Below, in pieces: positions 2,761 to 62,667 of a DNA stretch of 64,000 nucleotides. The position numbers and the translations under genes were made by a program. The stretch's first letter is position 1; every line of letters begins with the position of its first letter. The notes beneath the pieces are model-generated. The model made no database searches, had not been told where the DNA came from, and saw only the letters and a program-made list of their open reading frames with translations. Location: positions 124,001-188,000 of IMG/VR virus record IMGVR_UViG_3300034072_001021; one strand, 5' to 3'.

Positions 2761-2792
2761 CATAGAGGGAGGGCCGATGCCCTCCCTCTATG
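2761..2792. terminator. Bidirectional hairpin between convergent genes
   Basis: CATAGAGGGAGGGC-CGAT-GCCCTCCCTCTATG, 14-bp stem. Confidence 0.8.
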
Positions 2793-2794
2793 CG

Positions 2795-3058
2795 CTATGG
2801 AATATCTACTGGCGGTGATCCAGTAGCACCATGACCACAAGTGGCCACACTACCAACCCGTGTAACTGGGATACCGTCGATCGACCACCACGGACTTCCA
2901 GTCGCAATAACTGGAGCGTTATGAGGTGCCTGACCGTGCGGAGCAATCTTGTCACCAAGCAGCGATATCTTCTTACCATCCCATGTCCACGTGGGTGCAC
3001 CTGGTCCTGTAATAGGCCCGCCTGCACTGTCTACACCCACTAGCGATAAAGTACCCAT
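2795..3058 (-). CDS. PAAR-like spike tip protein (PhiKZ gp163.1-like)
   Basis: 87 aa; LLGD..PHG..PH, IATGS, DGIPVTRVGS and CGH metal-binding pattern; TAATG coupling to the spike gene. Confidence 0.85.
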   Translation of the reverse strand: MGTLSLVGVDSAGGPITGPGAPTWTWDGKKISLLGDKIAPHGQAPHNAPVIATGSPWWSIDGIPVTRVGSVATCGHGATGSPPVDIP

Positions 3059-3858
3059 TACGACGAGATCCCTTTAAAGCTCGGAGTCCTGAGCGTGGTG
3101 CCAGATGCTTGCAGTGTCAACACAGAGCCACCTCCATCAAGCGTTGCTTTCTTACACTTGAGATTGAAGTTGTTACCAGCTTCCAGATCAATGTCTTTCG
3201 GGGCATACCCTTTCATGAACTGCTTGTTCATCTCGATGTAAGTCCCCAACATGTTCTCCATGCGGAAGTGGGTATTCTTACTATCTATGAACGAATAGTT
3301 GCCGAGGTCATCCTGAAGCACCACTTTGCCGTTGGCCATGTCAAACTGGAAGTCGTAGGTGCAGAATTCACCATTCATCTTACTGGTCGAGAAGGTGACC
3401 ATCTTGGTGTGACTACTGAACTCAACAAAATACATGTTGTCTGGATCGAACCCATCTTGCGATTCCGACGGATTGGCGTTAATCGCCCAGATAACGGTCT
3501 CCAGACGACGCAGGTCATCGTTGAGGCCCATGCTACGCCAATAGTACTTATCGTTGCTACCGAACTGCCAGAGGGAGATATACTCGCCTCGACGAATATC
3601 GGGGGCTGTCTTACGGTTAGTCTCCGGCAACCATGTTGCAGTAACGTCATTGGAGACGAACGATGTACCGCTGACTGTCTTGCCGTCCTTATCCTGAGCT
3701 TCATAGTCGAGCGTATCGACTTTATTGACCAATTCCCCATCTACAAACGGTAGTTTTTCATGGGGTGTGACGACCAGTTCTTTCGAACCAAGTTGTTTGT
3801 TCTCAGCGGCGATCCCGATAGCCACACATCGGAAGACACTGGCGGTATTATCGAACAT
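3058..3858 (-). CDS. Central baseplate spike (PhiKZ gp164-like)
   Basis: N-terminal OB-like region (WLP..NRKTAPDIRRGE) followed by beta-helix-like periodicity; directly upstream of the PAAR gene. ATG 3858 fits the GAGG RBS. Confidence 0.75.
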   Translation of the reverse strand: MFDNTASVFRCVAIGIAAENKQLGSKELVVTPHEKLPFVDGELVNKVDTLDYEAQDKDGKTVSGTSFVSNDVTATWLPETNRKTAPDIRRGEYISLWQFGSNDKYYWRSMGLNDDLRRLETVIWAINANPSESQDGFDPDNMYFVEFSSHTKMVTFSTSKMNGEFCTYDFQFDMANGKVVLQDDLGNYSFIDSKNTHFRMENMLGTYIEMNKQFMKGYAPKDIDLEAGNNFNLKCKKATLDGGGSVLTLQASGTTLRTPSFKGISS

Positions 3859-3922
3859 GATCACCTCTTGTTAAATGAAACATTCAAAGCCTATCCTACA
3901 GAATTAGGGAAGGATAACCCAG

Positions 3923-6391: not shown

Positions 6392-6399
6392 GGTGTCAG

Positions 6400-6738
6400 A
6401 TGCAATTAGTGGAATCCAGTGTAGAGTTCTATCTGGGTGCTGCGACTACAGGTCAGCACAAAGACAAGTGGTCGTGGCCAGGTCGAGACCTACCGTACCT
6501 TTATCAGTGCAAGTGGGCTGCGTGCGAAAGCTCTCTTGACCCTGATATGGAAACATGGAAGAAGTACGGTCTGGTCAAAGCCTACGGTAAAGATTCCGGA
6601 TGGAGATTGATCAGCTTCAGTGACTTTGTCAACTACTTTGGTGAAGATCGCGTCAAGCGCATTCTGATCCACTGTCGATCGACATACCTCAAGGAGAGTA
6701 AGGACGCTATCCTTGATGAACTTGGTGCGCCAAAATAA
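6400..6738 (+). CDS. Hypothetical protein
   Basis: ORF with GAGGT RBS immediately after sbcC, followed by a hairpin. Confidence 0.6.
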   Translation: MQLVESSVEFYLGAATTGQHKDKWSWPGRDLPYLYQCKWAACESSLDPDMETWKKYGLVKAYGKDSGWRLISFSDFVNYFGEDRVKRILIHCRSTYLKESKDAILDELGAPK

Positions 6739-6739
6739 A

Positions 6740-6771
6740 AGGGAGAGGGCGTGAGCCCTCTCCCTATGCCG
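6740..6771. terminator. Hairpin with TATGCCG flank
   Basis: AGGGAGAGGGC-GTGA-GCCCTCTCCCT then ATGCCG; between convergent genes. Confidence 0.75.
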
Positions 6772-8133
6772 TCACGGTGCCAATACAGGCTCGTCACCAC
6801 CAGTCCCTTCGGAAAGGGTCGGGTCGTTGTACGAGTACTTACTCAGGACGATCAGCTGGAAGCGATCCAACGTGTACGCCACGTAGAGAACACCATCACG
6901 TACCAGACGAGTGAACTTGACCGGCACTGCCGAGTCAGGAGTCATCTCTTCTGCGACACCCAGCATCTCGATCAACGCCAGCACGAAACGACGAGTCTCC
7001 GGAGACATGCGACTGTTGTCCAGAGACAGCGAATCTACGTTGATGTAGTCGGGGTAGCGTTCAGTGAATGTGTCGATACCGTCACGATTTTTAGGACCAC
7101 CAGTTACTGTAACAGTGATGGCCTTGAACGGTGCGCCAAACACCTCTGCAACCGATTCAACGAACTCGTCGGTGTAGTACTCACCACGGACGAAGTTTTT
7201 GAGTGTTTCCATCGCTTCGGTAATCGGTACAGTCGAACTGTACAGACCGGCTTCCAACTCACGGTTCTCGATCGAGTACTTGCCCCAGATCGGAACGAAG
7301 ATGTACTCGGTGGAAGTGAAGATCTCCGGGAAGATCTCAGCCCACTCATCTTTGGTGTGAGTGCTGTTCTCGAGGATGTAGTCACGCAGAGCTTCCTTGA
7401 TGGAGTCTACGTTGAGACCAGCGATACCGTAGATGATCGGTGTCCAGTACGTCGGGATGCGCAGTGACTTGTTGGTCGGATCGAGTGGGTTGAACCATTC
7501 GAACATCTCACCGCGAATGAATGTCTCTGGGTACTCTTCCTTGATAGCTTGGACGCGTTCCATGGTCAGGTCATGTGTCTGAGCAGCCAAGGCTACTTTG
7601 ACAGCAGCACTGCCTTCAAAGAAGACATCCAGATCGGCTACCGGCGGAACCACTTCGATTTGGTATTCGTCGAACTGTTGTTCGAAGACTTCGGTCGAAT
7701 ACCAGATACGATATTGCAGTTCGTCGTTGACGATATCGCGGACTTCGATGACACTAGGCATCCAGATGTTCGGTTGAGCTTCCACCATGGCGCCGATGGC
7801 CCAGATGGAGAACTGATCACCGAATTGTTGGATGAACGTGGTACGGAAGGACTCGGTGGCCGGAGTGAAGTCACCGGCAAGAGCACGTTCGTAAGCCCAC
7901 TTGTTGATCAGGAGGAGTTTGTTGGCGAGGACAGGATCTGTCTGCTCAACTTCACCGTCACGCTTGCTACTGAACACTACCAGAGTGTGGCCTGGTGTTG
8001 CAGCGCTGTTCAGGTACTCTTTCTCTCGAGCATAGGTAAGAGCACGAGGCGAAAGCTCACCGATCGGAGCAACGACTGCGCGAGTGTTGTCGATCAGCGT
8101 AGCAATAACGCCAAAGGCTTTTAGTTTGTACAT
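6772..8133 (-). CDS. Putative virion structural protein
   Basis: Acidic ~450-aa ORF; ATG 8133 has a GGAGA RBS; upstream AATGGTATG late-type motif. Confidence 0.65.
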   Translation of the reverse strand: MYKLKAFGVIATLIDNTRAVVAPIGELSPRALTYAREKEYLNSAATPGHTLVVFSSKRDGEVEQTDPVLANKLLLINKWAYERALAGDFTPATESFRTTFIQQFGDQFSIWAIGAMVEAQPNIWMPSVIEVRDIVNDELQYRIWYSTEVFEQQFDEYQIEVVPPVADLDVFFEGSAAVKVALAAQTHDLTMERVQAIKEEYPETFIRGEMFEWFNPLDPTNKSLRIPTYWTPIIYGIAGLNVDSIKEALRDYILENSTHTKDEWAEIFPEIFTSTEYIFVPIWGKYSIENRELEAGLYSSTVPITEAMETLKNFVRGEYYTDEFVESVAEVFGAPFKAITVTVTGGPKNRDGIDTFTERYPDYINVDSLSLDNSRMSPETRRFVLALIEMLGVAEEMTPDSAVPVKFTRLVRDGVLYVAYTLDRFQLIVLSKYSYNDPTLSEGTGGDEPVLAP

Positions 8134-10988: not shown

Positions 10989-10993
10989 GCCAG

Positions 10994-11036
10994 CGGCATA
11001 GATGGGAGGGACTCGTGCCCTCCCATCCACTTATGC
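10994..11036. terminator. Hairpin with CGGCATA flank
   Basis: CGGCATA-GATGGGAGGG-7 nt-CCCTCCCATC...TTATGC. Confidence 0.7.
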
Positions 11037-11043
11037 GGCACAA

Positions 11044-18101: not shown

Positions 18102-18150
18102 AGTCAGTCGGGGATACGTCCCCGACTGATCTTACTTTTATTTTTTCTTT
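18102..18150 (+). terminator. Intrinsic terminator
   Basis: TCAGTCGGGGA-TACG-TCCCCGACTGA followed by T-rich sequence. Confidence 0.75.
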
Positions 18151-18162: not shown

Positions 18163-19161
18163 ATGTCACTCATTTCCAAACCGTTGTTCAGAACGAATAA
18201 CACAGAGAACCTTGAGGCTGCAGACGCCTACGACATCACGAACAATCGACCGATCAACAAGATCTACGAGTCGGCTAAGAGCGGTATTCGTGATCTAGTC
18301 GAAAGTGCGGGCGGTGCTCGAAACATCGGTAATAGCATCAGTGCTCTGGTGCAGATGAAACAAGCTGGCTATGGCGGTAAAGAGCTGCTTCAGGCCAGTC
18401 TTGGCATGTTTGGTACCAGTGTAGCGGGTCTACTCAAGACAACTGGAGGAGCTGTATTCGATAAGGCTGCAGCATTCATCGATCTTGATCCGAGTATCGT
18501 CGAAAAAGTCAAGATTGGCGGTAACTACGTTGCAGACGCACTTGAGTATGGCGATCCATCGCGCCTCGGTGACCTTCAGGGCTTAGTTGGCATCATGGGT
18601 GATATGGGACTCGATCCTGACACCCTAGAGATGATCAATATTGGTGTCGAGTCTGCCGTATGGGGTGCTGCTCTTGCTGGTGCATCGTCACTGAACTTGT
18701 TCGATTACTTCGATGCAGTGCGGGACAACACTGACCCAGATGTCTACTATCAGGCGGTTGTATTCGCATTGCCAACAGTAGCCGGCATGGGTTCATTGCA
18801 AGGTCTCGATGCCATGTTGTCTGCAGTTGGTGCTGAGAACATTCTAGTTAACCAACCAGACTTCATTCAGATCTTCATCAGCAATTTCACCATCCCTACT
18901 CCACAACCAGCTGACCTTAAAGCGTACGGTGTTGAGTTGGTAAACAAGTTGAAATTGATTGATCGGAACTGGTACACATATCAACGTGGCGAAGAGACCA
19001 TCATCGACTTCAAGTACATGTCGACTCCGTCTCGAGATGCAGTCCGTGTACTGGAGCTTCACGATGAGATCGGTCCTGCTATCCAGATTGCCCAAGGCTA
19101 TCCTGAGATCGCAGTGAGCGATTCCTTGCGGGAACAATTCCCACTGATGGTTGCACAATGA
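18163..19161 (+). CDS. Hypothetical, probably virion-associated protein
   Basis: 332-aa ORF convergent with the gp182-like gene. Confidence 0.6.
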   Translation: MSLISKPLFRTNNTENLEAADAYDITNNRPINKIYESAKSGIRDLVESAGGARNIGNSISALVQMKQAGYGGKELLQASLGMFGTSVAGLLKTTGGAVFDKAAAFIDLDPSIVEKVKIGGNYVADALEYGDPSRLGDLQGLVGIMGDMGLDPDTLEMINIGVESAVWGAALAGASSLNLFDYFDAVRDNTDPDVYYQAVVFALPTVAGMGSLQGLDAMLSAVGAENILVNQPDFIQIFISNFTIPTPQPADLKAYGVELVNKLKLIDRNWYTYQRGEETIIDFKYMSTPSRDAVRVLELHDEIGPAIQIAQGYPEIAVSDSLREQFPLMVAQ

Positions 19162-19199
19162 CATAAAGGCCAGGGGTAGTTCCCCTGGCCGATATGTCG
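19160..19199. terminator. Hairpin with GACATA/TATGTCG flanks
   Basis: GACATA-AA-GGCCAGGGG-TAGTT-CCCCTGGCC-GA-TATGTCG. Confidence 0.75.
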
Positions 19200-21278
19200 T
19201 TATTGACGTTCTGAAGCCATGCCGATTGCTCTGGCAAGTTCTCCAGGAATAGAGTCCATGGTCCACATAGCCATCCGGCTCGGCGATACCATGTCATCCA
19301 TTGCTGCTTGTTGGCGCGCCAGACGAACAGCCCACTTACGCAGACCATTGATTTCAGCTTCAAGCGGAAGACCAGCCAAAATGGACAGGTAATCCGTATA
19401 GTTGTTATCGTCGTCATACACACTGCCGGAGAACGCCGATGCAATTGCTTGACCGGTATCGCCACCACCTTCGTTACCTGTAGCAGCACCAACTACCGCA
19501 CCAAACGCGTAACCACCTGCTTGAGCAACCGCACTACCCAGATCGAACGTTGGGTTAATCGGCATGTTGATTGCATTGGATAGATCGATGAGACCGACCG
19601 TTACATCAACTCCCAAGAAACCACCTACGTTGTTCCAACCCACATCACCAACACCGCGAGTGAATGACAACGAGTCAATCATTGCCAGTCGACTATGCGC
19701 ACGACCTTGTGCAAAGTACTCCACCAAGAAAGGTGACGTGTGAGACTGCTTACCAGTAGCCAGAGGAACTGCCATGGCGAACAGACAGCACATCGGAAGA
19801 ATGATGTTCTGTAGACGTGACATCGGATCGCCGTAGGGAGAACGCAACGGAATGTTCAGCGTCAACTTGTTGAAGTCGCAACTAGAACTGTCCCAGACCT
19901 TTGGAATGTCGACGAATGCAGAACCGGCCAACTGAGCCAGACCTTGGATACCCAAGCCCGTCGACACACCTTGAGCGAAATCACGCATGGCGTTGAATGC
20001 ACCGCCAACGATACCAGTACCTTCCAAGTTACCATCGAACATGGTGAAGCGGGTTTCGCGAGCCGTGGCAGACATGCCATTGAGCGTGCCCTGGATACTC
20101 GGTTCTTTGGTGCTGTTGTTAAATGACTCGGATTGCGTACCAGTGTAGTCTACACGGAAACTGACAAACTCAGAACCCATTCGTGCCTCAGCAAGAACAG
20201 CTTCAGCATACTGTTCAATATACGACTCGTCACCACGAACAGCATACTCGACGGAGTCTTTGTTAGCCTCTGCGTCTGCGTCACTCTGGTTACCAAACCG
20301 CTCATACTTCATCCAGACATCGGAGTATGCTTTAAGGGTCGCTGACGTGCTGTTACTCAGCTCCTTATACGCTCCGTTGAGGTCCTGTCCGTACAGATAG
20401 CCCTGGAAGATCTTTTTGATCTCATTCTTATCCGTCTTTCCTTTGAGTTTACCGCGAAGGATGTCATGACGAGCGTTGATCAGGCGTTGACCACGCTGGG
20501 CAATCGCAAATACATCGAGACCACCGTCTTCACGATATACCGTAGGAATCATCTTGTGATAAGCTTTGACATCTGTTTCGTCAAGGAGGTCTTCCTTGTT
20601 GAACAGAGCTTTACCGCCTTCATACATGACTCGCGGGATGATACCCATGTTGGCAGCAATGCCATTGACCATGCCAGAAACAGCAGACCAATAAGGATAC
20701 ATGGTGGGCTTCATGAAGTAGTACTTGCTGGCAGGACGTCTCAAGAAGAAGCGGATTACCTTGCCAGCAAACACAAACGGGATCAACGGAATCGACGCAA
20801 TCGAACCCATGGCCCAACCGAGGTTGTAGAAAAATCCAGGGGCACGACCAGTACGTGCCATAGACGCGGCAGGTACAGAGTAATAGTTCGCGTAGAACGA
20901 TGTCATCGAGTTGAACTCAGGGACACCGCAACGGAAATGGACTATCTGAGTGTTCTCGTAGAACTTCTCATGATAGACGCGGCCCATGCCATTGCCTTTG
21001 ACGCCATCCGTCTTGTTAATCCTCGACACACGAGGGATCAGGATGTTGTTACCTTTTGGATCAGATGCGTTACTGAACACGTTGTGCTTCAGATCTGCAT
21101 ACCGAGTGAATTGAGCCAGAGGATTGATAATGAAACATCCGCCCGGCGTGGTATCGCCAGCTTGCTGCATAGAGGTCGAATAGATGCGGTTAACCACCGC
21201 TTCATCGCCTCCGATTGCAGCATCTGCTGGCAGCAGAAAAGCTGATTTTACCCAGCCACTGTCAAGAATGTTATTCAT
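19200..21278 (-). CDS. Tail/baseplate structural protein (gp182-like)
   Basis: 692 aa, directly downstream of the gp181-like gene; GAGGT RBS. Confidence 0.65.
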   Translation of the reverse strand: MNNILDSGWVKSAFLLPADAAIGGDEAVVNRIYSTSMQQAGDTTPGGCFIINPLAQFTRYADLKHNVFSNASDPKGNNILIPRVSRINKTDGVKGNGMGRVYHEKFYENTQIVHFRCGVPEFNSMTSFYANYYSVPAASMARTGRAPGFFYNLGWAMGSIASIPLIPFVFAGKVIRFFLRRPASKYYFMKPTMYPYWSAVSGMVNGIAANMGIIPRVMYEGGKALFNKEDLLDETDVKAYHKMIPTVYREDGGLDVFAIAQRGQRLINARHDILRGKLKGKTDKNEIKKIFQGYLYGQDLNGAYKELSNSTSATLKAYSDVWMKYERFGNQSDADAEANKDSVEYAVRGDESYIEQYAEAVLAEARMGSEFVSFRVDYTGTQSESFNNSTKEPSIQGTLNGMSATARETRFTMFDGNLEGTGIVGGAFNAMRDFAQGVSTGLGIQGLAQLAGSAFVDIPKVWDSSSCDFNKLTLNIPLRSPYGDPMSRLQNIILPMCCLFAMAVPLATGKQSHTSPFLVEYFAQGRAHSRLAMIDSLSFTRGVGDVGWNNVGGFLGVDVTVGLIDLSNAINMPINPTFDLGSAVAQAGGYAFGAVVGAATGNEGGGDTGQAIASAFSGSVYDDDNNYTDYLSILAGLPLEAEINGLRKWAVRLARQQAAMDDMVSPSRMAMWTMDSIPGELARAIGMASERQ

Positions 21279-21297
21279 GAACTACCTCAGGAAAAAA

Positions 21298-21326
21298 GTA
21301 GGTGTGGGGTTTCCCCCACACCTATT
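21298..21326 (-). terminator. Intrinsic terminator
   Basis: TAGGTGTGGGG-TTTC-CCCCACACCTA with an A-tract on its left (U-tract on the minus strand). Confidence 0.7.
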
Positions 21327-21331
21327 TCGGT

Positions 21332-33848: not shown

Positions 33849-33880
33849 ACAGCGCCTCGTAGTTTCACAGGAACTTGCTC

Positions 33881-39709: not shown

Positions 39710-39711
39710 TG

Positions 39712-39750
39712 CGACATATACAGGGGAGCCTAAGGCTCCCCTGTATGCCG
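39712..39750 (+). terminator. Hairpin with CGACATA/TATGCCG flanks
   Basis: ATACAGGGGAGCC-TAA-GGCTCCCCTGTAT. Confidence 0.75.
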
Positions 39751-39759
39751 TTTTGATTC

Positions 39760-39788
39760 GATTCGAAATATTTTCAACAATACATAGT
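39760..39788 (+). promoter_or_regulatory. Putative early promoter GATT-N16-ATACATAGT
   Basis: Bipartite motif in AT-rich intergenic DNA heading an accessory operon. Confidence 0.7.
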
Positions 39789-39844
39789 AACGTTGAATAG
39801 GAAGAATGATCTTCCAATAACCAAGTGTTCTCAGGAGAACAACC

Positions 39845-40796: not shown

Positions 40797-40811
40797 GCAG
40801 GAGCCGGCTAG

Positions 40812-40845
40812 AGAAAGGGGCCTTCGGGCTCCTTTCTTTTTCTTT
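40812..40845 (+). terminator. Intrinsic terminator
   Basis: AGAAAGGGGCC-TTCG-GGCTCCTTTCT followed by a T-tract. Confidence 0.8.
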
Positions 40846-40855
40846 GTTTCCGTTC

Positions 40856-41486: not shown

Positions 41487-41530
41487 GATAGCCTGGGGGT
41501 GTCCCCAGGCTATCGTCCTTTATTTTTGTT
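41487..41530 (+). terminator. Intrinsic terminator
   Basis: GATAGCCTGGGG-GTGT-CCCCAGGCTATC followed by T-rich sequence. Confidence 0.75.
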
Positions 41531-42063: not shown

Positions 42064-42070
42064 GCGAAAT

Positions 42071-42100
42071 ATAGATCCCAGGGATATCCCTGGGATCTAT
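42071..42100. repeat. Perfect 30-bp palindrome
   Basis: ATAGATCCCAGGGATATCCCTGGGATCTAT. Confidence 0.9.
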
Positions 42101-42111
42101 GGGGAGTGGAA

Positions 42112-43000: not shown

Positions 43001-43030
43001 GGCTCCGGATTTTATTTCTTTTTTTGTTTC

Positions 43031-43059
43031 GATTGGACTTAAAGACAACAATACATAAT
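43031..43059 (+). promoter_or_regulatory. Putative early promoter GATT-N16-ATACATAAT
   Basis: Bipartite motif immediately after a terminator. Confidence 0.7.
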
Positions 43060-43094
43060 AGCGTTGACTTAACCAAATAGCTGAGGCGCTAATT

Positions 43095-44492: not shown

Positions 44493-44502
44493 TCCATCGA
44501 GA

Positions 44503-44546
44503 CGGCATATACGGGGGCAACTGCCCCCGTATACCGTTCTTTTTTT
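44503..44546. terminator. Terminator with CGGCATA flank
   Basis: TATACGGGGGCA-AC-TGCCCCCGTATA then a T-tract; between convergent genes. Confidence 0.75.
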
Positions 44547-52934: not shown

Positions 52935-55151
52935 ATGCAGACTATTCTTTTTGAGCGCGATTGGGATTATTACCCGACTGCGATCTGGGATACCAAGACT
53001 ACCAACAAGTCTTTCCTTGAATTCTCAGCGCTTCTTAAGCACATGGGGGTCAAGAACCATTTGTTCCCTCTGGCTCTTATGCAGCCGGAGCTTCAGGGGG
53101 TTGATCCGTACGATCCCTCCTTGTCAGACGACATAAAACTGAAGATCAAAATCGAGTGTACGTTTAACCCATGGTACTTCATCCGTGAGGTTATGCGTGT
53201 ACCTCCAGCGGCAGGTGATACACCTGTTAAGCTGGAAGCTAACCGGGGCAACATTTCTCTATGGTGGTCGTTCCTTAACCACATCGACTATTTCCTCGTC
53301 CAGATTCGTCAGACTGGTAAGTCGCTGAACTCTGACGGTATCTCGGTTTGGTATCAAATCTTCGGCGCACGTAACTCCCGTGCTAACCTGTTCACCAAAG
53401 GTGACTTGTTTAAAGAACACATTGCACGTCTGAAGAAACTACGTGCTCTGTTGCCGAAGTACTTAGTCAACATCGTCAAGAAAGATACCGACAACCAGAA
53501 AGAATTCACCAACATGTCTCAGGGCAACCGCATGGTGGTGTACATCCCGCAAAAGGATGAAGAAGCAGCAAACAACCTGGGTCGTGGTCTGACCACCCCC
53601 TACAACCACGTGGACGAAATTGCGTTCCTTAAGAACGTACACATCTCCCTCGGTGTTATGCTGGCGGGCGGTGGTGCTGCTCGTGAAGAAGCGGCACGTA
53701 ACGGCCTGCCGTACGGCAACATCTTCACTACTACTGCTGGCGAACTGGATACTCCGGAAGGCGCTTACGCGTACGACCTGATGACCGGTGGTGCAGAGTG
53801 GAACGATGCGTTCTATGACTGTGCCAATACCGACGAGCTGTATGAGGTGGTGCGGAAGCAATGCCGTAACAAAGATGCAATCCTCATCAACGGTACGTTC
53901 AACCATCGTCAATTAGGTAAGACTGATGCATGGTTGAGGAAGAAGATCGCGGAATCTCGTCAGACCGGTGACGGTGTACGTCGAGACTACATGAACGAGT
54001 GGACGACGGGTAATGCCCGAAACCCGCTCAGCAAAGATACGCTGCGTAAGATCCATGCCAGTGTAACTAAGCCTTCTTACCTTGAGATCGACAAACAAGA
54101 CCACTACTCCATCCGCTGGTACATCACGCGAGAAGAAGTAGAGACAGGAATCTCTCGTCGTCAAATGGTCATGGGCATCGATACCTCCAACGCCGTAGGG
54201 CGAGACAACATCACAGGTGTCATTGTCGACATCAGTACACTTGAGGTGGTGGGTGCATGGACTGTCAACGACTCTAACCTGACCGCATTTGCAATGTGGT
54301 TGGCAAAGATCATTGTCAGATTCCAGAACATCACCATTGTACCTGAATCGAAATCGACGTGGATTGGCATCCTCGATACCTTGCTGCTCACGTTGCCGAA
54401 CTATAAGGTCGATCCGGCTAAACGTATCTATTCGACACTGGTGGATGCTAAGGACGAATCACCTGAGGCTAAACGGCGCTATAACGAGTATGTGGGCGAT
54501 CGCGACAACTACCGCTCCTACCGTAAGTTCTTCGGCTTCCCAACGAACAGCCAGCTCCGTGAGATCATTTACGGGCCTGTTCTGCAAGAGGCTGCGAAGA
54601 AGTCTGGTGCTGTGGTGCGTGACGCTAAGCTGCAAAGCGAACTGGGTCGTCTGGTTGAGCGTAACGGACGTATTGACCACGATGCATCCGGGCACGATGA
54701 CCACGTCATCAGCTGGCTGCTTTGCCATTGGTTCCTTACCTACGGTAAGAACCTCGATCACTACGGAATCACTGTCAGTGAAATCAAACGTCGTGTCTAT
54801 GAAGCAGAGCACAAGCTCTCGTGGAGTGAACAACGTCGTTATGATGACCAACAGAGTATCCGTGATGAGATTGGTCGCCTGAGTGAAACGCTTGGTAACG
54901 AGCGTAACACTTACGAACGAATCAAGCTACAACAACGACTGGATCTGCTCATCAGCAAGGTTGATGATGAGTTTGATATGGAGGGTATCACTTCCATTGA
55001 CCAGATCAAAGAGAATAGCCGCGAGAAGAAGATGATTGAAACTCGCTCGTTCGGTCCAGGTAAACCGTTGGAAATCGAGAAGCCCCTGAACACCAGTTTC
55101 AACAGACGTCGTGAGATGTTCAAGAATCAAAATGTGATGGTGGTGGTATGA
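52935..55151 (+). CDS. terL: Terminase large subunit (gp25-like)
   Basis: NPWYFIRE, Walker A RQTGKS, Walker B HVDEIAF, TTTAG, nuclease motifs MGIDTS and GHDDHV. Confidence 0.92.
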   Translation: MQTILFERDWDYYPTAIWDTKTTNKSFLEFSALLKHMGVKNHLFPLALMQPELQGVDPYDPSLSDDIKLKIKIECTFNPWYFIREVMRVPPAAGDTPVKLEANRGNISLWWSFLNHIDYFLVQIRQTGKSLNSDGISVWYQIFGARNSRANLFTKGDLFKEHIARLKKLRALLPKYLVNIVKKDTDNQKEFTNMSQGNRMVVYIPQKDEEAANNLGRGLTTPYNHVDEIAFLKNVHISLGVMLAGGGAAREEAARNGLPYGNIFTTTAGELDTPEGAYAYDLMTGGAEWNDAFYDCANTDELYEVVRKQCRNKDAILINGTFNHRQLGKTDAWLRKKIAESRQTGDGVRRDYMNEWTTGNARNPLSKDTLRKIHASVTKPSYLEIDKQDHYSIRWYITREEVETGISRRQMVMGIDTSNAVGRDNITGVIVDISTLEVVGAWTVNDSNLTAFAMWLAKIIVRFQNITIVPESKSTWIGILDTLLLTLPNYKVDPAKRIYSTLVDAKDESPEAKRRYNEYVGDRDNYRSYRKFFGFPTNSQLREIIYGPVLQEAAKKSGAVVRDAKLQSELGRLVERNGRIDHDASGHDDHVISWLLCHWFLTYGKNLDHYGITVSEIKRRVYEAEHKLSWSEQRRYDDQQSIRDEIGRLSETLGNERNTYERIKLQQRLDLLISKVDDEFDMEGITSIDQIKENSREKKMIETRSFGPGKPLEIEKPLNTSFNRRREMFKNQNVMVVV

Positions 55152-55187
55152 CGGCATAGAGGGAGGCTCAGGCCTCCCTCTATGCCG
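55152..55187. terminator. Bidirectional hairpin, archetype of the CGGCATA family
   Basis: CGGCATAGAGGGAGGC-TCAG-GCCTCCCTCTATGCCG, perfect 16-bp stem with no U-tract. Confidence 0.8.
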
Positions 55188-55189
55188 GA

Positions 55190-56059
55190 TCACTTAAAGT
55201 TCGAGTAGACGACCATCCGAAGATAGTCGGCCAGATCCCTCGAACGGTAGAACAGTGCCGCATGCAGAGCAGTGTTGTATGGATGCATCATTTCACGATC
55301 CAAGTACTTGATCAGCGGGTGCGGGTCATCCACACCACCTGCCAGTTCACGGAATGAAAGCAATTTACCCATTCGTTCTTCGAGATCATCGAAGATCTTT
55401 TCCAACTGATCTGCAAACTCATCGAACTTGTCTGCCCAGCGACAGAAGATGATTGCCTTTTCGGCAGTCATTGATCCAATAGGGATCGGCATGTTCGTAT
55501 CAGGGCGCACTGGTACCTTGAGGACTACCAACATCTCATCACGGAAGGGCTTAGCTTCCACGATGACACGGGAGGACTTCATACCAAGTAAACGGACGGT
55601 TGACTTAGCGAGATGTTCTGCCACTGTTTGAGGACGGCTGGACAATGCATCATTCATGCTTATTTTGGCAAGCATGGAAGTGACACGACCAGCCCATTCG
55701 AGATATCGCATACTACGATCGTAGGCGATACTCGATAAGACAGTGTACATATTGAATTCACGGTTGAGGAACTCATCAGTCATCGAATCGATCGATGATC
55801 CACAAACAACCAGCCATGCAGGATGGACAGTTGGTGAACCATTCGATGGGCCTTTGAAAACCTGTTCGTTAAGACTGACATCGGTGAACTTATCCATGTT
55901 CGCCGGATCATTCCAAGGTGCACGAGGCAGTTTCCTAACGGTGTATTCGTCGGGGAGTTTGAATTCCCCGAATATCTCACTTAACCTACCTTCCATAGAC
56001 ACGGTCTGGACTCCTTCTGCGGAGTGCTGTGCTCTCAAATACTCGAGCAACTTTTCCAT
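55190..56059 (-). CDS. Putative head protein with short propeptide
   Basis: N-terminal HSAE and VSME motifs; overlaps the upstream stop. Confidence 0.6.
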   Translation of the reverse strand: MEKLLEYLRAQHSAEGVQTVSMEGRLSEIFGEFKLPDEYTVRKLPRAPWNDPANMDKFTDVSLNEQVFKGPSNGSPTVHPAWLVVCGSSIDSMTDEFLNREFNMYTVLSSIAYDRSMRYLEWAGRVTSMLAKISMNDALSSRPQTVAEHLAKSTVRLLGMKSSRVIVEAKPFRDEMLVVLKVPVRPDTNMPIPIGSMTAEKAIIFCRWADKFDEFADQLEKIFDDLEERMGKLLSFRELAGGVDDPHPLIKYLDREMMHPYNTALHAALFYRSRDLADYLRMVVYSNFK

Positions 56060-57396: not shown

Positions 57397-57462
57397 AAAG
57401 GGGAAGAAAGCGAATACAAACGCGATCATCAAGACATAACCAGCACCAATGGAGTGACAGCA

Positions 57463-58044: not shown

Positions 58045-58053
58045 CCCCCTTTC

Positions 58054-58127: not shown

Positions 58128-58145
58128 GTTTAAGGAGCTAGGAGC

Positions 58146-58550: not shown

Positions 58551-58558
58551 ACCGATAC

Positions 58559-58597
58559 GATCACTGCTCTTAACGGGGCAGTGATCTATTCTTTTTT
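58559..58597 (+). terminator. Intrinsic terminator
   Basis: GATCACTGCTC...GGGCAGTGATC followed by a T-tract. Confidence 0.7.
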
Positions 58598-58616
58598 GTT
58601 TAATGGGGAGTTCTGT

Positions 58617-58813: not shown

Positions 58814-58887
58814 TATATATAGACCGGCCTGACGTACCAAACTATATCAGGTTTTCCGTAAAAGAAAAAAAGTTTAAGAGTGCCGCC

Positions 58888-59304: not shown

Positions 59305-59605
59305 AGCAATACTGATCACAATTGTCGTAGCGCTGTCTCTCTGGCCCTACATCACCCACTTCATCCGTGAGAAGAAATTCCACGGAGCTTGTTACGAGAT
59401 GGGTGTGGCGTACATTGAAGTGTTCTACCAGACGATCAGACATCGTTTCGTAGATGCGATAGGTACGCTGGCATTGTTGTTCTTGCTGTGTGCCGTATTC
59501 AGTAACTTTGCCATCGCTATGGCCATCTATTTCATCCACATCATGATCGTGGGTAAGATAGCTATCCATTACGGACATGAGCCTGGTAGTGTCGAGTGGA
59601 AATAG
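59288..59605 (+). CDS. Multi-pass membrane protein
   Basis: GAGGA RBS at ATG 59288; about 3 hydrophobic segments. Confidence 0.6.
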   Translation: MWIVVEAILITIVVALSLWPYITHFIREKKFHGACYEMGVAYIEVFYQTIRHRFVDAIGTLALLFLLCAVFSNFAIAMAIYFIHIMIVGKIAIHYGHEPGSVEWK

Positions 59606-59634
59606 TAGGGAGGGCATTTGCCCTCCCTATGCCG
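59606..59634 (+). terminator. Hairpin with TATGCCG flank
   Basis: TAGGGAGGGCA-TT-TGCCCTCCCTA then TGCCG. Confidence 0.7.
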
Positions 59635-59638
59635 AGTG

Positions 59639-59667
59639 GATTGAACCAATACTGAAAGATACATTAC
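59639..59667 (+). promoter_or_regulatory. Putative early promoter GATT-N16-ATACATTAC
   Basis: Bipartite motif. Confidence 0.7.
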
Positions 59668-59719
59668 AGAGGGGATATGGAGAATGACTCTCCATCACCT
59701 ATGGTCTCAGGAGACTTAC

Positions 59720-60052
59720 ATGTCCATCATTCAGATGTTCGATTATTCCATCAGTGCTCTGACGGTAGTGTGCTACCTGCTCAGTGTGATCATGACCGTC
59801 AAATACGGTAATGAGTCCTGGAAGGGCTATTGCATCATGACTCACAAGGTCATGGCTCAGTCTTTCTTCAGCAAGACCTGGATCGCTGCGGTGAATATCA
59901 TCGCCCTGGCGTCCTTGTTCTCTGCCTTGTTTTATTTCAAGGTCTACGCCTTTGTTGTGGTGAATGTCATTCTGCTACTGGTCACGATTGTGGTGTCTGT
60001 GATCGGTGAAGAGGTGATCGACCGCGAATCCAACCATGCCGAAGATCAATAG
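59720..60052 (+). CDS. Multi-pass membrane protein
   Basis: AGGAG RBS at ATG 59720; 3 hydrophobic segments. Confidence 0.65.
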   Translation: MSIIQMFDYSISALTVVCYLLSVIMTVKYGNESWKGYCIMTHKVMAQSFFSKTWIAAVNIIALASLFSALFYFKVYAFVVVNVILLLVTIVVSVIGEEVIDRESNHAEDQ

Positions 60053-60060
60053 GAGATCTC

Positions 60061-60549
60061 ATGCACCTCAATCAAGCCATCGACAGTTTCAATGATGCTG
60101 TCCATTACGTAGGTAAGTACTACGGCTGGATCGCTGATGCCACTCTCTACCTACCGTTTACCTTCTTGCTTCTACGGCAAGGCCATCAGGCAGCAACAGC
60201 TTATCCGGAAACGATATCGCATGCGAAGTACTTATTCGGTCCCGCGTGCATCAATCGTCTCTTGGTAGTATCAGACGACAACATGCCTCAGATGGATCGT
60301 CAACTGCGCATGGACATCGAAGAGGTGTTCAAGGTGGTCGCGTTTGAACTGAACTACCTGATGGATAAGGTCAGGAGAGTCGAAAACAAGATGCCGTGCG
60401 TCAATGAGATGGGCCGTTTGATCATGGCATTCAAGGACACGTTCAGTGGCATGCATATGCGACAAGTGGAATCTGAACTGGCGATCAATTACCTGCGCGA
60501 GTGCCAGAACAGTTACTTGGAAGCACGACTCACCTGGTTCACTAAGTGA
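60061..60549 (+). CDS. Hypothetical protein
   Basis: AGGAG RBS, 162 aa. Confidence 0.65.
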   Translation: MHLNQAIDSFNDAVHYVGKYYGWIADATLYLPFTFLLLRQGHQAATAYPETISHAKYLFGPACINRLLVVSDDNMPQMDRQLRMDIEEVFKVVAFELNYLMDKVRRVENKMPCVNEMGRLIMAFKDTFSGMHMRQVESELAINYLRECQNSYLEARLTWFTK

Positions 60550-60551
60550 CG

Positions 60552-60590
60552 CGACATAGGTAGGGGCACTGGCCCCTACCTATGCTTTTT
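60552..60590. terminator. Hairpin with CGACATA flank and T-tract
   Basis: CATAGGTAGGGGC-ACTG-GCCCCTACCTATG then CTTTTT. Confidence 0.8.
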
Positions 60591-60602
60591 CTTTGGTTAA
60601 AA

Positions 60603-61427
60603 TTAACGCTTAGGGCCAACGATATAGCGAAGCAGTCTGCGATGCTGCTCTTTGTTTGCCATGACCGATGCCTTTCTCCATTTGTCACGGAGATGCTCTT
60701 TGTACATGGTGTTGGCATCGGCGTACGAATCAACGATCTCACGAATACGGCCTAGCGAGGCACCACCACGGATAGCACCTTCATCGAGTTCGATGATAGC
60801 GCGGTTGTAGATGAATGCTTTCGTAGCCAGAATAACCAATTCGGTGAACGGATCTGCAAAACTGGACGGGATGTTCTGCAGGTTCGGATCGTGACTGACC
60901 AGACAACGCAGATAGGCAATGCCGGGGATGCGTGCCATGTTGGTAACCATGACAGTGTTGTCGGCTACCAGTGTGCAGTAGGCAGTCTGGAGTTGAGTCC
61001 ACGGGATGTTGGACTGAATGACCCCCTGAACAGCTTCCAGAACAGCTGAACGATCTTCAGAGATCACACCGGTATGACCTAGTGCATGACCTTGACCATA
61101 ACCCACGCCGTAGACTTCAGTGATACTGCGACCTTGAGTCAGATCTTTAGGGATACGGTAGATCATCGTCCAGTTGTCGACACGCTCAACCTCAGCGTTG
61201 TTCAATGGGACGAAGATCTCGACACCGGAACTGAGATCCAGGTCAACCAGCACACGGGCTTCAATGACCTGACGACGAATCACTGTGTCAGTGCTGATGC
61301 CGGTGCTGTAATCACGTACGAGGCCGTCTTTGGTCGGATCGTAACGCGTCGGTGAAAAGGTGTAACGAAGCACTTCACGAGGGATTTCGAACTTAACCCT
61401 GTCCAGTGCAACCGTGATAAGATCCAT
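60603..61427 (-). CDS. Conserved-looking jumbo-phage protein, probably virion assembly
   Basis: 274 aa, GAGGT RBS, divergent from phuZ. Confidence 0.6.
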   Translation of the reverse strand: MDLITVALDRVKFEIPREVLRYTFSPTRYDPTKDGLVRDYSTGISTDTVIRRQVIEARVLVDLDLSSGVEIFVPLNNAEVERVDNWTMIYRIPKDLTQGRSITEVYGVGYGQGHALGHTGVISEDRSAVLEAVQGVIQSNIPWTQLQTAYCTLVADNTVMVTNMARIPGIAYLRCLVSHDPNLQNIPSSFADPFTELVILATKAFIYNRAIIELDEGAIRGGASLGRIREIVDSYADANTMYKEHLRDKWRKASVMANKEQHRRLLRYIVGPKR

Positions 61428-61537
61428 GGATGCAAACCTCTATAAACAAAAGTACACATGATTGGTTTCCAATCTATGTGCTAAATGGCTATCTTTGTTT
61501 GACCTTCATAGGTCATGACCCATTTCGATCTGAAGGA

Positions 61538-61566
61538 TAATCGAATATTCTACGGGAATACATTAT
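61538..61566 (+). promoter_or_regulatory. Putative early promoter TAAT-N16-ATACATTAT for phuZ
   Basis: Perfect core with a degenerate upstream element. Confidence 0.6.
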
Positions 61567-61631
61567 CCATGTACAGAGACATACGAATTTCTGTTTTACA
61601 ACCCGCAACATCATCCATTGAGGAGATACAC

Positions 61632-62621
61632 ATGCAACAAGGTCTTTCTACCCGTCCTGTTGGTAAAGTGAGGATCTATGGGTGCGGCGGAGGTGGCGTA
61701 AACATCGGTAAAGAGTACATCGAAAACGGTCACTCTGCCGATCTCGCCAACATCGAAGTCGCCTTCATCGACACCTCCGACTCGAACCTCGAAGACCGCC
61801 TGGTCGATCGCACCTGGCTCTTCGATCAACTCGACGGCTCCGGCGCTATCCGCAACAGCAACGACAAGACCATCGCCAAGCACATCCCCGACATCCTGCG
61901 CAAGTTCGAGCCGGGCGACGTCAACATCGTGATCTTCACCCTGGCCGGTGGTACTGGTTCGGTAGCTGGTCCGCTGATCCTGAAGCAACTGCTGGAAGAC
62001 GGCCACATGGCCATGGCCGTGGTCATCGGTGCCAAGCAATCCCTGCGCAACGCCGAGAACACCATCGCTTCGGTCAAGACCCTCGACGCCATCGCTCGTG
62101 CCTCCGGTAAGCCGGTCATCATGCACCTGGGCTTCAACGCCAGCAAGTCCGTCTCCGACGCCGATGTCGACCGTGAAGCTCACGGCATGATCTCTGCTCT
62201 GTCGGTACTGTGCTCGCGTCGTAACCACGGCCTGGACACCGCAGACCTGCGTTCGTTCTTCGACTTCACCAAGTCGACCGGCGCTCCTGCTCAACTGGCT
62301 CGCATCCATGTGACCGACAACGTCGACTTCTTCGATCGCACCATGAACAACGGCGGCCTGTCGGCTGCTTACCTGTTGCGTGAGCAGAACGACGAGACCC
62401 CCGGCACCTTCGTACCCTACTGCACCTACGGCACCATGCCGTCGATCGCGCAGTTCAACAGCAGCCTGTTCTTCGGTATCGAGAACGGTACGCTGGCGGA
62501 CTTCCGTGAGCACGTGCAGCAACTGCAGAAGGAAATCGACATGCAGAAGCGCACCACCAGCGAGGCCGTTGGCTTCCTCGGCGCTGATGACAAGCTGTCC
62601 GACACCGGTCTGGTGTTGTAA
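61632..62621 (+). CDS. phuZ: PhuZ phage tubulin (spindle protein)
   Basis: GCGGGGVNIG, FIDTS, DGSG, tubulin signature AGGTGS, T7 loop LDTAD, C-terminal DTGLVL; GAGGAG RBS at ATG 61632. Confidence 0.95.
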   Translation: MQQGLSTRPVGKVRIYGCGGGGVNIGKEYIENGHSADLANIEVAFIDTSDSNLEDRLVDRTWLFDQLDGSGAIRNSNDKTIAKHIPDILRKFEPGDVNIVIFTLAGGTGSVAGPLILKQLLEDGHMAMAVVIGAKQSLRNAENTIASVKTLDAIARASGKPVIMHLGFNASKSVSDADVDREAHGMISALSVLCSRRNHGLDTADLRSFFDFTKSTGAPAQLARIHVTDNVDFFDRTMNNGGLSAAYLLREQNDETPGTFVPYCTYGTMPSIAQFNSSLFFGIENGTLADFREHVQQLQKEIDMQKRTTSEAVGFLGADDKLSDTGLVL

Positions 62622-62632
62622 GTAGCATTGAG

Positions 62633-62667
62633 GACTGTGGGAGGAAACTCCCACAGTCTTTATGCCG
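62633..62667 (+). terminator. Hairpin with TATGCCG flank
   Basis: GACTGTGGGAG-GAAA-CTCCCACAGTC-TT-TATGCCG. Confidence 0.75.

What the first reader, a model, noticed from the sequence alone, without database searches (positions are those of the whole stretch)
2761..62667. Family of about 10 hairpins with conserved CG(G/A)CATA...TATG(C/T)CG flanks, mostly without U-tracts
Seen at 2761, 6740, 10994, 19160, 39712, 44503, 55152, 59606, 60552 and 62633. Each has a purine-rich 5' arm (often AGGGAGGGC), a variable loop, and full or partial CGGCATA/CGACATA before and/or TATGCCG/TATGTCG after. The flank is kept even where it cannot pair (6765, 59628, 62661, 44503), so the sequence itself appears selected, not only the structure. 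The flank contains TATG, the late-promoter core. Inference: a phage-specific termination or processing signal, or a protein-binding tag on mRNA 3' ends (for example for export from the phage nucleus), rather than ordinary intrinsic terminators.
Basis: partly seen in the sequence, partly recalled or inferred. Interest (0 to 1): 0.6.

Follow-up and report, generated by a model that had tools for sequence, protein, structure and literature searches.

The report
Jumbo-phage terminator hairpins with TATGCCG tail
These hairpins are the phage's own end-of-gene transcription stop signals, a GC-rich stem-loop followed by (C)TATGCCG(T) instead of a run of U, of the kind already mapped by RNA sequencing in phage phiKZ, so the sighting is real but mostly not new.

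Summary
The window is part of a 259-kb phiKZ-like (Chimalliviridae) jumbo phage. Its nearest isolate is Pseudomonas phage pPa_SNUABM_DT01.

- **Observation.** All ten hairpins are real (-22 to -36 kcal/mol). They belong to a larger set: 102 of 269 genes have a strong hairpin starting a median 5.5 nt after the stop codon. Of these, 57 carry TATG, consensus C-TATG-C-C-G-T, 3' of the stem in the sense of the upstream gene.
- **Why both flanks appear.** The tail is commonest at convergent gene ends (34/41), where it sits on both strands. That produces the CGGCATA...TATGCCG palindrome. At tandem ends only the 3' tail is kept.
- **Conservation.** Stems covary and differ between orthologous DT01 sites, while the tail persists. 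The tail is also enriched beside GC hairpins in phiKZ, LucasX and RAY, but not in 14-1, T4 or AR9.
- **Prior knowledge.** It matches the published phiKZ terminator motif (hairpin + YTTATKYYGT). Mapped phiKZ 3' ends fall within -1 to +2 nt of the G of TATG in 30 of 33 cases.
- **What differs here.** Arm polarity is reversed (purine arm first) and the tail is GC-rich.
- **Tentative additions.** TATG tails close middle/late units and rarely early ones. This hints that nvRNAP reads the tail through its TATG pocket.

The parts
2758..2801 (.). Terminator hairpin (stem 2758-2794) after gene 1501-2757 (+). The + tail is CTATGCGC. The mirror on the 5' side is CGTCATAG.
   Evidence: 51.6 bits on +, 45.9 bits on -; -30.5 kcal/mol
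6732..6774 (.). Bidirectional terminator between convergent genes 6388-6738 (+) and 6772-8157 (-). Stem 6740-6765. The + tail is TATGCCGTCA and cannot pair. The - tail is TTTATTTT.
   Evidence: (-24.9 kcal/mol)
10990..11042 (.). Bidirectional terminator between 10608-10988 (+) and 11044-11904 (-). Stem 10998-11030. The + tail is CACTTATGCGGC and the - tail is CTATGCCGC.
   Evidence: (-29.5 kcal/mol)
19158..19204 (.). Bidirectional terminator between 18163-19161 (+) and 19200-21278 (-). Core stem 19168-19190. Tails are GATATGTCG (+) and TTTATGTCA (-).
   Evidence: (-30.5 kcal/mol)
39710..39755 (+). Terminator after gene 38288-39709. Stem 39717-39747, tail TATGCCGTTTTG. It is followed directly by an early-like promoter.
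   Evidence: (-27.4 kcal/mol). The orthologous DT01 hairpin has a different stem and the same tail.
42067..42107 (+). Terminator after gene 41563-42063. Stem 42070-42101, tail CTATGGGG.
   Evidence: (41.2 bits)
44499..44545 (.). Bidirectional terminator between 43095-44492 (+) and 44559-45425 (-). Core stem 44508-44533. The + tail is a T-tract (CCGTTCTTTTTTT). The - tail is TATGCCGTC.
   Evidence: (-27 kcal/mol). The DT01 orthologue keeps both tail types.
55148..55193 (.). Perfect 16-bp palindromic bidirectional terminator between the terminase gene 52935-55151 (+) and 55190-56062 (-). TATGCCG tail on both strands.
   Evidence: (-35.9 kcal/mol). The DT01 orthologue has a different stem but keeps CGGCATA...TATG.
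59601..59640 (+). Terminator after gene 59270-59605. Stem 59605-59630, tail TATGCCGAG with no 5' mirror.
   Evidence: (-22.3 kcal/mol)
60549..60597 (.). Bidirectional terminator between 60061-60549 (+) and 60603-61427 (-). Stem 60555-60584. The + tail is TATGC followed by a T-tract. The - tail is TATGTCGCG.
   Evidence: (-25.7 kcal/mol)
62624..62672 (+). Terminator after gene 61515-62621. Stem 62625-62665, tail TTTATGCCGTCT.
   Evidence: (-29.7 kcal/mol). The DT01 orthologue has one stem change and the tail TTATGCCGTGT.
18103..18147 (+). Stop-proximal hairpin with a T-tract tail (second tail class), after gene 17532-18095.
21285..21328 (-). Stop-proximal hairpin with a T-tract tail after the 2147-aa gene 21332-27775 (-).
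40810..40855 (+). T-tract terminator closing the short unit that starts at the early-like promoter near 39779.
   Evidence: The DT01 orthologue is also T-tract.
41487..41527 (+). T-tract terminator after gene 40844-41467.
58554..58605 (+). T-tract terminator after gene 58146-58550.
39739..39808 (+). Early-like promoter motif (TCGATTC.AAT.TATTTCAACAATACATAGTG) abutting the 39712 terminator. Context only, not part of the hairpin family.
   Evidence: PWM score 76.1
43010..43079 (+). Second strong copy of the early-like promoter motif. Its unit ends at the T-tract side of the 44503 terminator.
   Evidence: (PWM score 62.2)

Best explanation
The hairpins are the phage's own transcript 3'-end signals, that is, terminators of the phiKZ type.

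- **Layout.** Each unit reads, in the RNA sense: stop codon; about 0-10 nt; a 9-13 bp GC-rich stem with a purine-rich 5' arm and a pyrimidine-rich 3' arm; usually a tetraloop; then the tail (C)UAUGCCGU, where a bacterial terminator would have its U-tract.
- **Two-sided flanks.** Between convergent genes one palindrome serves both strands. Each strand then carries its own tail, and the two tails happen to pair. This is why CG(G/A)CATA appears on the 5' side.
- **One-sided flanks.** Between tandem genes only the 3' tail is kept.
- **Predicted RNA ends.** By analogy with phiKZ, RNA ends are predicted at or 1-2 nt past the G of UAUG.
- **Shown here.** Anatomy, position, directionality, covariation, conservation across the family, and identity of the tail with the published phiKZ terminator motif.
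- **Inferred.** That RNA ends form here in this phage. That the tail acts on the phage non-virion RNA polymerase rather than on a nuclease or a binding protein.
For: - **Position.** 102 of 269 genes have a strong hairpin starting a median 5.5 nt after the stop codon.
- **Tail consensus.** 57 of these have TATG, with +4 C in 41/57, +5 C in 38/57, +6 G in 36/57 and +7 T in 32/57.
- **Directionality.** Convergent gene ends have a hairpin in 41/48 cases, and 34/41 of those have a TATG tail in the sense orientation. Tandem ends have a hairpin in 61/221 cases; 23 have TATG, and 16 of the 23 lack the 5' mirror.
- **Strand-specific loops.** In tandem contexts there are 15 UUCG/GNRA loops against 3 of their reverse complements.
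- **Enrichment.** 71/160 hairpin sides against a 2.7% background, p = 5e-67. 26 of 43 TATGCCG heptamers follow a hairpin.
- **Covariation.** 100% of 288 cells are paired and 10 of 10 pairs show double-sided changes.
- **Orthologous DT01 sites.** They keep position and tail class, with different stems.
- **Covariance model.** Model R1 gives 91 hits in the own genome and 73 in DT01.
- **Same tail in other chimalliviruses.** Present in phiKZ, LucasX and RAY. Absent in 14-1 and T4 and in AR9.
- **Literature.** 61 mapped phiKZ terminators share a hairpin plus YTTATKYYGT (PMC10914365). Motif A of 201phi2-1 resembles it (PMC11512511).
- **Re-analysis of published phiKZ TTS.** 30 of 33 TATG-tailed terminators have the RNA 3' end at -1 to +2 from the G of TATG.
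Against: - There are no RNA 3'-end data for this phage. The public runs that hold it are kept as contigs, which cannot show ends.
- ONT-cappable-seq 3' ends in phiKZ do not separate termination from processing.
- The tail is GC-rich (CUAUGCCG). The weak rU:dA hybrid mechanism of bacterial intrinsic termination therefore cannot be assumed.
- About 45 of the 102 stop-proximal hairpins lack the tail (T-tract or other), so the tail is not obligatory.
Confidence: 0.8

Rival explanations
1. RNA processing or stabilising element. Transcription reads through; a host or phage nuclease cuts at the single-stranded UAUGCCG, or a 3' exonuclease trims back to the stem. The hairpin then protects the mature 3' end.
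For: The published TTS are only accumulations of 3' ends with at least a 20% read drop (methods of PMC10914365). The tail is not U-rich. The hairpins are very stable. Only 28% of tandem gene ends have a hairpin, which is compatible with punctuation of polycistronic RNAs.
Against: A simple exonuclease block needs no conserved tail. The tail is conserved across phages whose hosts range from Pseudomonas to Xanthomonas and Erwinia, which argues against a host nuclease site. In phiKZ the tail class follows the promoter (polymerase) class. No dedicated nuclease was identified.
Confidence: 0.12
2. The tail TATG is a late promoter, or a re-initiation site, placed just behind a terminator hairpin. The conserved flank would then serve initiation of the next gene.
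For: TATG with G at +1 is the necessary core of phiKZ late promoters (PMC4666361). At tandem sites the tail lies 12-60 nt upstream of the next gene. Second TATG copies often follow the tail.
Against: - The tail is commonest at convergent gene ends, where a promoter would only make antisense RNA (34/41).
- CCGT downstream of TATG is conserved here, whereas phiKZ late promoters show no conservation downstream.
- None of the phiKZ TSS rows read (P008-P149) starts at a hairpin-adjacent tail TATG. The nearby TSS lie 5-40 nt further on.
- Mapped phiKZ 3' ends, not 5' ends, sit at the tail G.
Confidence: 0.05
3. A tag on mRNA 3' ends for a phage RNA-binding protein, for export from the phage nucleus, stability or translation. 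It could act in addition to termination or instead of it.
For: A conserved single-stranded tail beside a conserved homopurine/homopyrimidine stem is the kind of feature a protein could read. Chimalliviruses must export mRNA from the phage nucleus (PMC11077065).
Against: ChmC, the only nucleus-associated RNA-binding protein with published eCLIP data found here's literature search, binds about 25-30 nt downstream of start codons and showed no motif. Early units, which also need translation, mostly lack the tail in phiKZ. No candidate binder was found here.
Confidence: 0.05
4. A DNA-level element: a REP/MITE-like mobile palindrome, a cruciform, or a dimeric DNA-binding site (CGGCATA-N-TATGCCG).
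For: The inverted repeats are perfect. Several stems are near-identical (AGAGGGAGGC at four or more sites). One 117-nt terminator-promoter cassette is duplicated.
Against: Position is tied to stop codons and to the direction of the upstream gene. Only one half-site is kept at tandem sites. Loops are strand-specific RNA tetraloops. Orthologous sites in DT01 have diverged, compensated stems rather than presence/absence polymorphism.
Confidence: 0.02

Closest known systems
phiKZ conserved terminator motif (BCCYCCCCHWWDGGGRRGGBYTTATKYYGT; Putzeys et al. 2024, PMC10914365)
   Same: A GC-rich homopurine/homopyrimidine stem-loop with a tetraloop, just after genes. The tail TATKYYGT equals TATGCCGT here. 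A mirror GGCATAA lies on the 5' side at bidirectional sites. The phage is a nucleus-forming jumbo phage with its own RNA polymerases.
   Different: Arm polarity is reversed: the purine arm comes first in 78/80 hairpins here, against mostly pyrimidine-first in phiKZ (56 vs 29). The model built here finds only 4 phiKZ sites. The tail is preceded by C rather than T and is GC-rich. No RNA ends have been mapped here.
201phi2-1 terminator motifs A and A/B (PMC11512511)
   Same: A conserved terminator motif that the authors say resembles the phiKZ one. Combination with a second motif lengthens the stem, much as the CGGCATA/TATGCCG extension does here.
   Different: The motif letters appear only in a figure and could not be compared. 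That paper interprets long stems as resistance to antitermination.
Bacterial intrinsic (Rho-independent) terminators, including bidirectional ones
   Same: A GC-rich hairpin close to the stop codon, and one palindrome serving convergent genes. A second class in this genome does have T-tracts (23 T-tract-only tails and 7 TATG tails followed by a T-tract, of 102).
   Different: The defining U-tract is replaced by CUAUGCCG in 50 of the 57 TATG-tailed ends. The other 7 also carry a T-tract. The tail is sequence-conserved rather than composition-conserved.
phiKZ late promoter core TATG (Yakunina 2015, PMC4666361), read by nvRNAP subunit GP123 (PMC12809450)
   Same: The same tetranucleotide. In phiKZ the G is +1 at promoters, and mapped terminator 3' ends fall at -1 to +2 of the tail G.
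   Different: Here it follows a hairpin, is followed by conserved CCGT, occurs at convergent ends, and is associated with 3' ends rather than 5' ends.
T7 RNA polymerase class II (sequence-specific) termination signals (own knowledge, not tested here)
   Same: A phage polymerase stopping at a conserved short sequence rather than at a generic U-tract. This is the nearest analogue for how the tail might work.
   Different: Class II signals need no hairpin and act on a single-subunit polymerase. There is no sequence similarity.

Membership tests
phiKZ-type conserved terminator (hairpin + TTATKYYGT) | GC-rich stem-loop of about 7-13 bp with homopurine/homopyrimidine arms and a short loop | tested here: met
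   arms; loops are mostly 4 nt
phiKZ-type conserved terminator (hairpin + TTATKYYGT) | 3' tail TATKYYGT directly after the stem, in the RNA sense | tested here: met
   PWM TATG-C-C-G-T in 57 gene ends; enrichment p = 5e-67
phiKZ-type conserved terminator (hairpin + TTATKYYGT) | Published arm order: 5' CCYCCCC, 3' GGGRRGG | tested here: not met
   78 of 80 hairpins here have the purine arm first. Model R1 finds 73 DT01 sites but only 4 phiKZ sites.
phiKZ-type conserved terminator (hairpin + TTATKYYGT) | Lies downstream of genes, and is bidirectional between convergent genes | tested here: met
   Median 5.5 nt after the stop codon. 41 of 48 convergent ends have a hairpin.
phiKZ-type conserved terminator (hairpin + TTATKYYGT) | RNA 3' ends accumulate at the element | not testable with these tools
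   Only contigs of public runs could be laid on the sequence. Shown for phiKZ only.
phiKZ-type conserved terminator (hairpin + TTATKYYGT) | Host phage encodes the phiKZ-type non-virion RNA polymerase | tested here: met
   GP123 homologue at G000:87670-89313, E = 7.6e-67. vRNAP subunits in the window. PhuZ in DT01.
Canonical bacterial intrinsic terminator | U-tract (about 6 or more U within 8-9 nt) directly after the stem | tested here: not met
   Only 7 of the 57 TATG-tailed ends also have at least 6 T in 8 nt. A separate class of 23 ends has a T-tract only.
phiKZ late promoter | TATG upstream of, and oriented toward, a gene, with no conserved sequence downstream | tested here: not met
   Commonest at convergent ends. 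CCGT downstream is conserved. phiKZ TSS do not coincide with tail TATGs.
REP/MITE-like mobile palindrome | Near-identical copies at non-orthologous sites, independent of gene direction | tested here: not met
   Stems vary with compensation. Sites are orthologous in DT01. The tail follows gene direction.
Any curated Rfam family | Match at the gathering score | tested here: not met
   0 matches in the window

The most novel reading that the evidence does not exclude
The UAUG(CCG) tail may be a polymerase-specific stop signal.

- **Proposed mechanism.** The non-virion RNA polymerase reads non-template-strand TATG with the same GP123 pocket under the beta-lobe that fixes the start site at late promoters. 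Behind a nascent hairpin, this pauses and releases the enzyme with the RNA end at the G. One 4-nt word would then mark both starts and stops of middle/late transcripts.
- **Early transcripts.** Those made by the virion polymerase would instead end at T-rich tails.
- **phiKZ 3' ends.** They sit at -1 to +2 of the tail G in 30 of 33 cases.
- **phiKZ unit classes.** TATG tails close 27 of 51 middle/late-only units but 1 of 14 units with an early promoter (p = 0.002).
- **This phage.** Units starting at early-like promoters end preferentially in T-tracts (6/11 vs 17/91, p = 0.015).
- **Pocket conservation.** 8 of 14 pocket residues are identical at 28% overall identity.
- **AR9.** Its late promoters are not TATG-based, and it shows no tail.
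- **Against: the structure.** The pocket is described as incomplete in the transcribing complex.
- **Against: counterexamples.** T-tracts also follow some virion genes here (6772-8157 and 21332-27775).
- **Against: the statistics.** The promoter classes are motif-based and genes of one class cluster together, so the tests are not independent.
Probability: 0.3. Interest if true: 0.75.

Novelty: new variant of a known kind. Interest (0 to 1): 0.45.

Why it matters
Nucleus-forming jumbo phages transcribe with two unusual multisubunit polymerases inside a compartment that excludes host factors.

- **Conservation.** The phiKZ terminator tail survives intact in a 51% GC genome, where it is no longer U-rich. 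It is also found in chimalliviruses of Pseudomonas, Xanthomonas and Erwinia. This shows that the sequence is selected, not its base composition.
- **Practical use.** It gives an annotation rule for operon ends in this family. Such parts are useful for engineering these phages.
- **Testable link.** The coincidence with the promoter core TATG, and the split between TATG-tailed and T-tailed terminators, can be tested with purified nvRNAP, which already exists.

Tried and rejected
- **MAFFT alignment of 41 family members (A1).** It lined up the tails but broke the stems, so RNAalifold returned no structure. It was replaced by 10 seeds in identical register with a hand-given structure.
- **Public reads.** 20 runs hold the sequence or a relative, but all four runs laid, chosen as the best RNA-labelled holders, are kept as contigs. 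They gave no information on RNA ends.
- **Rfam and tRNA scans.** Nothing was found.
- **Strict pattern GGCATAA-N-TTATGCC in AR9, LucasX and RAY.** No hit; the pattern was too strict to be informative.
- **Tail ATG as a start codon.** Rejected, because the median open frame is 19 codons.
- **A shared motif among the 'other' tails (CCTTTACAG).** Not repeated in the genome.
- **The two genes upstream of the duplicated cassette as paralogues.** They are not.
- **Supplementary tables of the two journal papers.** Not held. The bioRxiv supplement was used instead.
- **phiKZ promoters P001-P007.** Not read, so units in the first 20 kb of phiKZ rest on PWM hits only.
- **AR9 co-variation test.** The idea was that the tail would match AR9's own promoter core AACA-N6-TA/G. 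There were only 8 GC hairpins, all with T-rich tails, so the test has little power.
- **Referral.** No step needed referral.
Full report
**What the window is.** The window is G000:C1:124001-188000 of a 259,140-bp virus record with 127-bp terminal repeats. Its only close isolate is Pseudomonas phage pPa_SNUABM_DT01, with terminase at 78.7% nucleotide and 84.6% amino-acid identity. Virion RNA polymerase beta/beta' genes, a tail sheath, terminase and an RNase H-like gene lie in the window. DT01 carries PhuZ tubulin in the syntenic stretch. The genome also encodes a homologue of phiKZ GP123, the beta-like subunit of the non-virion polymerase (E = 7.6e-67).

**Observation.** All ten hairpins are present. 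They fold at -22 to -36 kcal/mol with z-scores of -4.5 to -8.4. I called 269 genes with a codon-usage ORF picker.
- Of 275 perfect hairpins of 7 bp or more, 100 lie in the 10.4% of the genome that is intergenic.
- Folding the 80 nt after every stop codon shows 102 genes with a hairpin of -15 kcal/mol or stronger starting within 30 nt. The median distance from the stop is 5.5 nt.
- 57 of these have TATG 8-17 nt 3' of the loop. The context is C-C-C-C-T-C-TATG-C-C-G-T.
- TATG lies beside 44% of hairpin sides, against 2.7% of random windows (p = 5e-67).
- 26 of the 43 TATGCCG heptamers in the genome directly follow a hairpin.

**Direction and level of action.** This is the key result.
- At convergent gene ends, 41 of 48 have the hairpin, and 34 of the 41 carry the tail in the sense of their own gene. 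Each palindrome therefore bears a tail on each strand.
- At tandem ends, 61 of 221 have a hairpin and 23 of these have the tail. In 16 of the 23 there is no CATA mirror on the 5' side.
- The 'conserved flanks' are thus one directional 3' tail. It looks two-sided only where two genes share a terminator. A promoter would not be most frequent at convergent ends.
- In tandem contexts the loops are UUCG or GNRA 15 times, against 3 for their reverse complements. This marks the transcribed strand.
- The ATG inside the tail is not a start codon, since the median open frame is 19 codons.

**Family and conservation.** A covariance model built from ten seeds in identical register gave these counts:

| Genome | Threshold | Hits |
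|---|---|---|
| this phage | E ≤ 1 | 91 |
| DT01 | E ≤ 0.01 | 73 |
| phiKZ | E ≤ 0.01 | 4 |

. On the model alignment of window and DT01 hits, all 288 cells pair and all 10 pairs show double-sided changes. Two caveats apply: the alignment is fitted to the model, and both strands of each palindrome are counted.

Twelve syntenic junctions compared with DT01 mostly keep a hairpin and, in about ten, the tail class. The stems differ.

The tail and its mirror also flank GC-rich hairpins in other chimalliviruses but not in the controls:

| Phage | Hairpin sides with TATG |
|---|---|
| phiKZ | 16/34 |
| Xanthomonas phage LucasX | 22/36 |
| Erwinia phage RAY | 5/8 |
| Pseudomonas phage 14-1 (control) | 0/20 |
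| T4 (control) | 0/8 |
| AR9 (late promoters not TATG-based) | 1/16 |

.

**What is already known.** ONT-cappable-seq of phiKZ mapped 133 termination sites. Sixty-one share a hairpin followed by YTTATKYYGT (PMC10914365). Phage 201phi2-1 has a resembling motif (PMC11512511). TATKYYGT is TATGCCGT. The finding is therefore an instance of a published element.

I combined the published phiKZ coordinates (bioRxiv supplement) with the genome.
- 85 of the 133 sites have a GC hairpin, and 33 of those have a TATG tail.
- The mapped 3' end lies at -1 (11 sites), +1 (8), +2 (11), -3 (2) or +3 (1) from the G.
- None of the phiKZ start sites read begins at a tail TATG. The nearby starts lie 5-40 nt further on.

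**What differs here.**
- The arm order is reversed. The purine arm comes first in 78 of 80 hairpins, whereas phiKZ is mostly pyrimidine-first. This explains why the model barely sees phiKZ. I have no explanation for such a strict, lineage-specific polarity.
- The tail sits in a 51% GC genome and is not U-rich. Selection therefore acts on the sequence, and a weak rU:dA hybrid cannot be the mechanism.

**Two tail classes.** Of the 102 hairpins, 23 carry a T-tract instead of TATG, 7 carry both and 22 carry neither.

I found a 45-nt early-promoter-like motif, TCGATTC.AAT.TATTTCAACAATACATAGTG. It has 11 strong copies, all on the + strand. It is built like the phiKZ early promoter.
- In this phage, the first terminator after these promoters is a T-tract in 6 of 11 cases, against 17 of 91 for all other terminators (p = 0.015).
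- In phiKZ, units containing an early promoter end in a TATG tail in 1 of 14 cases. Units with only middle or late promoters do so in 27 of 51 (p = 0.002).
- There are counterexamples here: T-tracts follow the virion genes 6772-8157 and 21332-27775.
- The tests are not phylogenetically or positionally independent.

**Mechanism.** I commit to termination or 3'-end formation at the hairpin plus tail (confidence 0.8).

The more specific idea rests on a 2026 structure (PMC12809450). In it the core beta-like subunit GP123 binds single-stranded non-template TATG, with G at +1.
- An elongating enzyme meets the same word 4-6 nt behind the stem.
- phiKZ RNA ends fall at that G.
- Eight of 14 pocket residues are identical in this phage's homologue, at 28% overall identity.
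- Against the idea, the pocket is reported as incomplete in the transcribing complex.
- This remains inference (probability about 0.3).

Processing, promoter, binding-tag and DNA-level readings are weighed under the rival explanations. The ChmC eCLIP data give no support to an export tag.

**Verdict.** The element is a variant of a known phiKZ-family terminator, so the finding is moderately interesting rather than novel. The polymerase-specific reading is the part worth an experiment.

Noticed in passing
window 39739-39808, 43010-79 and, weaker, 40835-904, 57347-416, 59618-87; also G000 54909, 59485, 74825, 86464, 104062, 105232, 218857, 234729, 252580: A long conserved intergenic motif, TCGATTC.AAT.TATTTCAACAATACATAGTG..G.TGAATA. 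It has 11 strong copies, all on the + strand, usually directly behind a terminator. It probably corresponds to the phiKZ early (virion polymerase) promoter.
   Followed up: partly
window 39707-39823 versus G000:252513-252623: A 117-nt cassette of terminator plus early-like promoter is 91% identical at two loci whose upstream genes are unrelated. This suggests that regulatory cassettes are copied or converted between sites.
   Followed up: partly
genome-wide; window examples 55152, 6740, 59606: Strict arm polarity. The purine-rich arm comes first in 78 of 80 GC-rich hairpins here, the opposite of phiKZ and LucasX, and RAY is mixed. No explanation was found.
   Followed up: partly
window 55145-55158, 2751-2764, 60545-60558; G000 55822, 81835: At bidirectional sites, the mirror of the tail extension CCGTCA reads TGACGG. 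The TGA stop codon of the + strand gene is therefore often part of the opposite strand's terminator tail.
   Followed up: no
window 18103-18147, 21285-21328, 40810-40855, 41487-41527, 58554-58605: A second class of stop-proximal hairpins has T-tract tails. These preferentially close short units that start at the early-like promoters. They also follow two virion genes.
   Followed up: partly
window 33841-33857 and L005 1052-1070: After the vRNAP beta/beta' gene the hairpin stems differ between this phage and DT01. The following sequence, CCTTTACAGCGCCTCG, is conserved. It is not repeated elsewhere in the genome.
   Followed up: partly
window 9097-10596 (+): A 499-aa RNase H-like protein (phrog_3265 and phrog_531). 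It corresponds in size and annotation to phiKZ gp155. It is possibly the counterpart of the RNase H-clamp protein Rhc described for Goslar (PMC13648698).
   Followed up: no
G000:87670-89313 (outside the window): A homologue of phiKZ GP123, the nvRNAP subunit that binds TATG. Of the 14 listed pocket residues, 8 are identical and 2 are conservatively replaced.
   Followed up: yes
window 56801-62800: Close relatives (90-99% identity) occur in subsurface, soil, wastewater, sediment and hot-spring runs from 12 studies. Contig ends show variant hairpins at 60552 (CGGCATA instead of CGACATA) and at 62633, which has a changed stem.
   Followed up: no
G000 1-127 and 259014-259140: The genome ends carry a 127-bp exact direct terminal repeat.
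   Followed up: no
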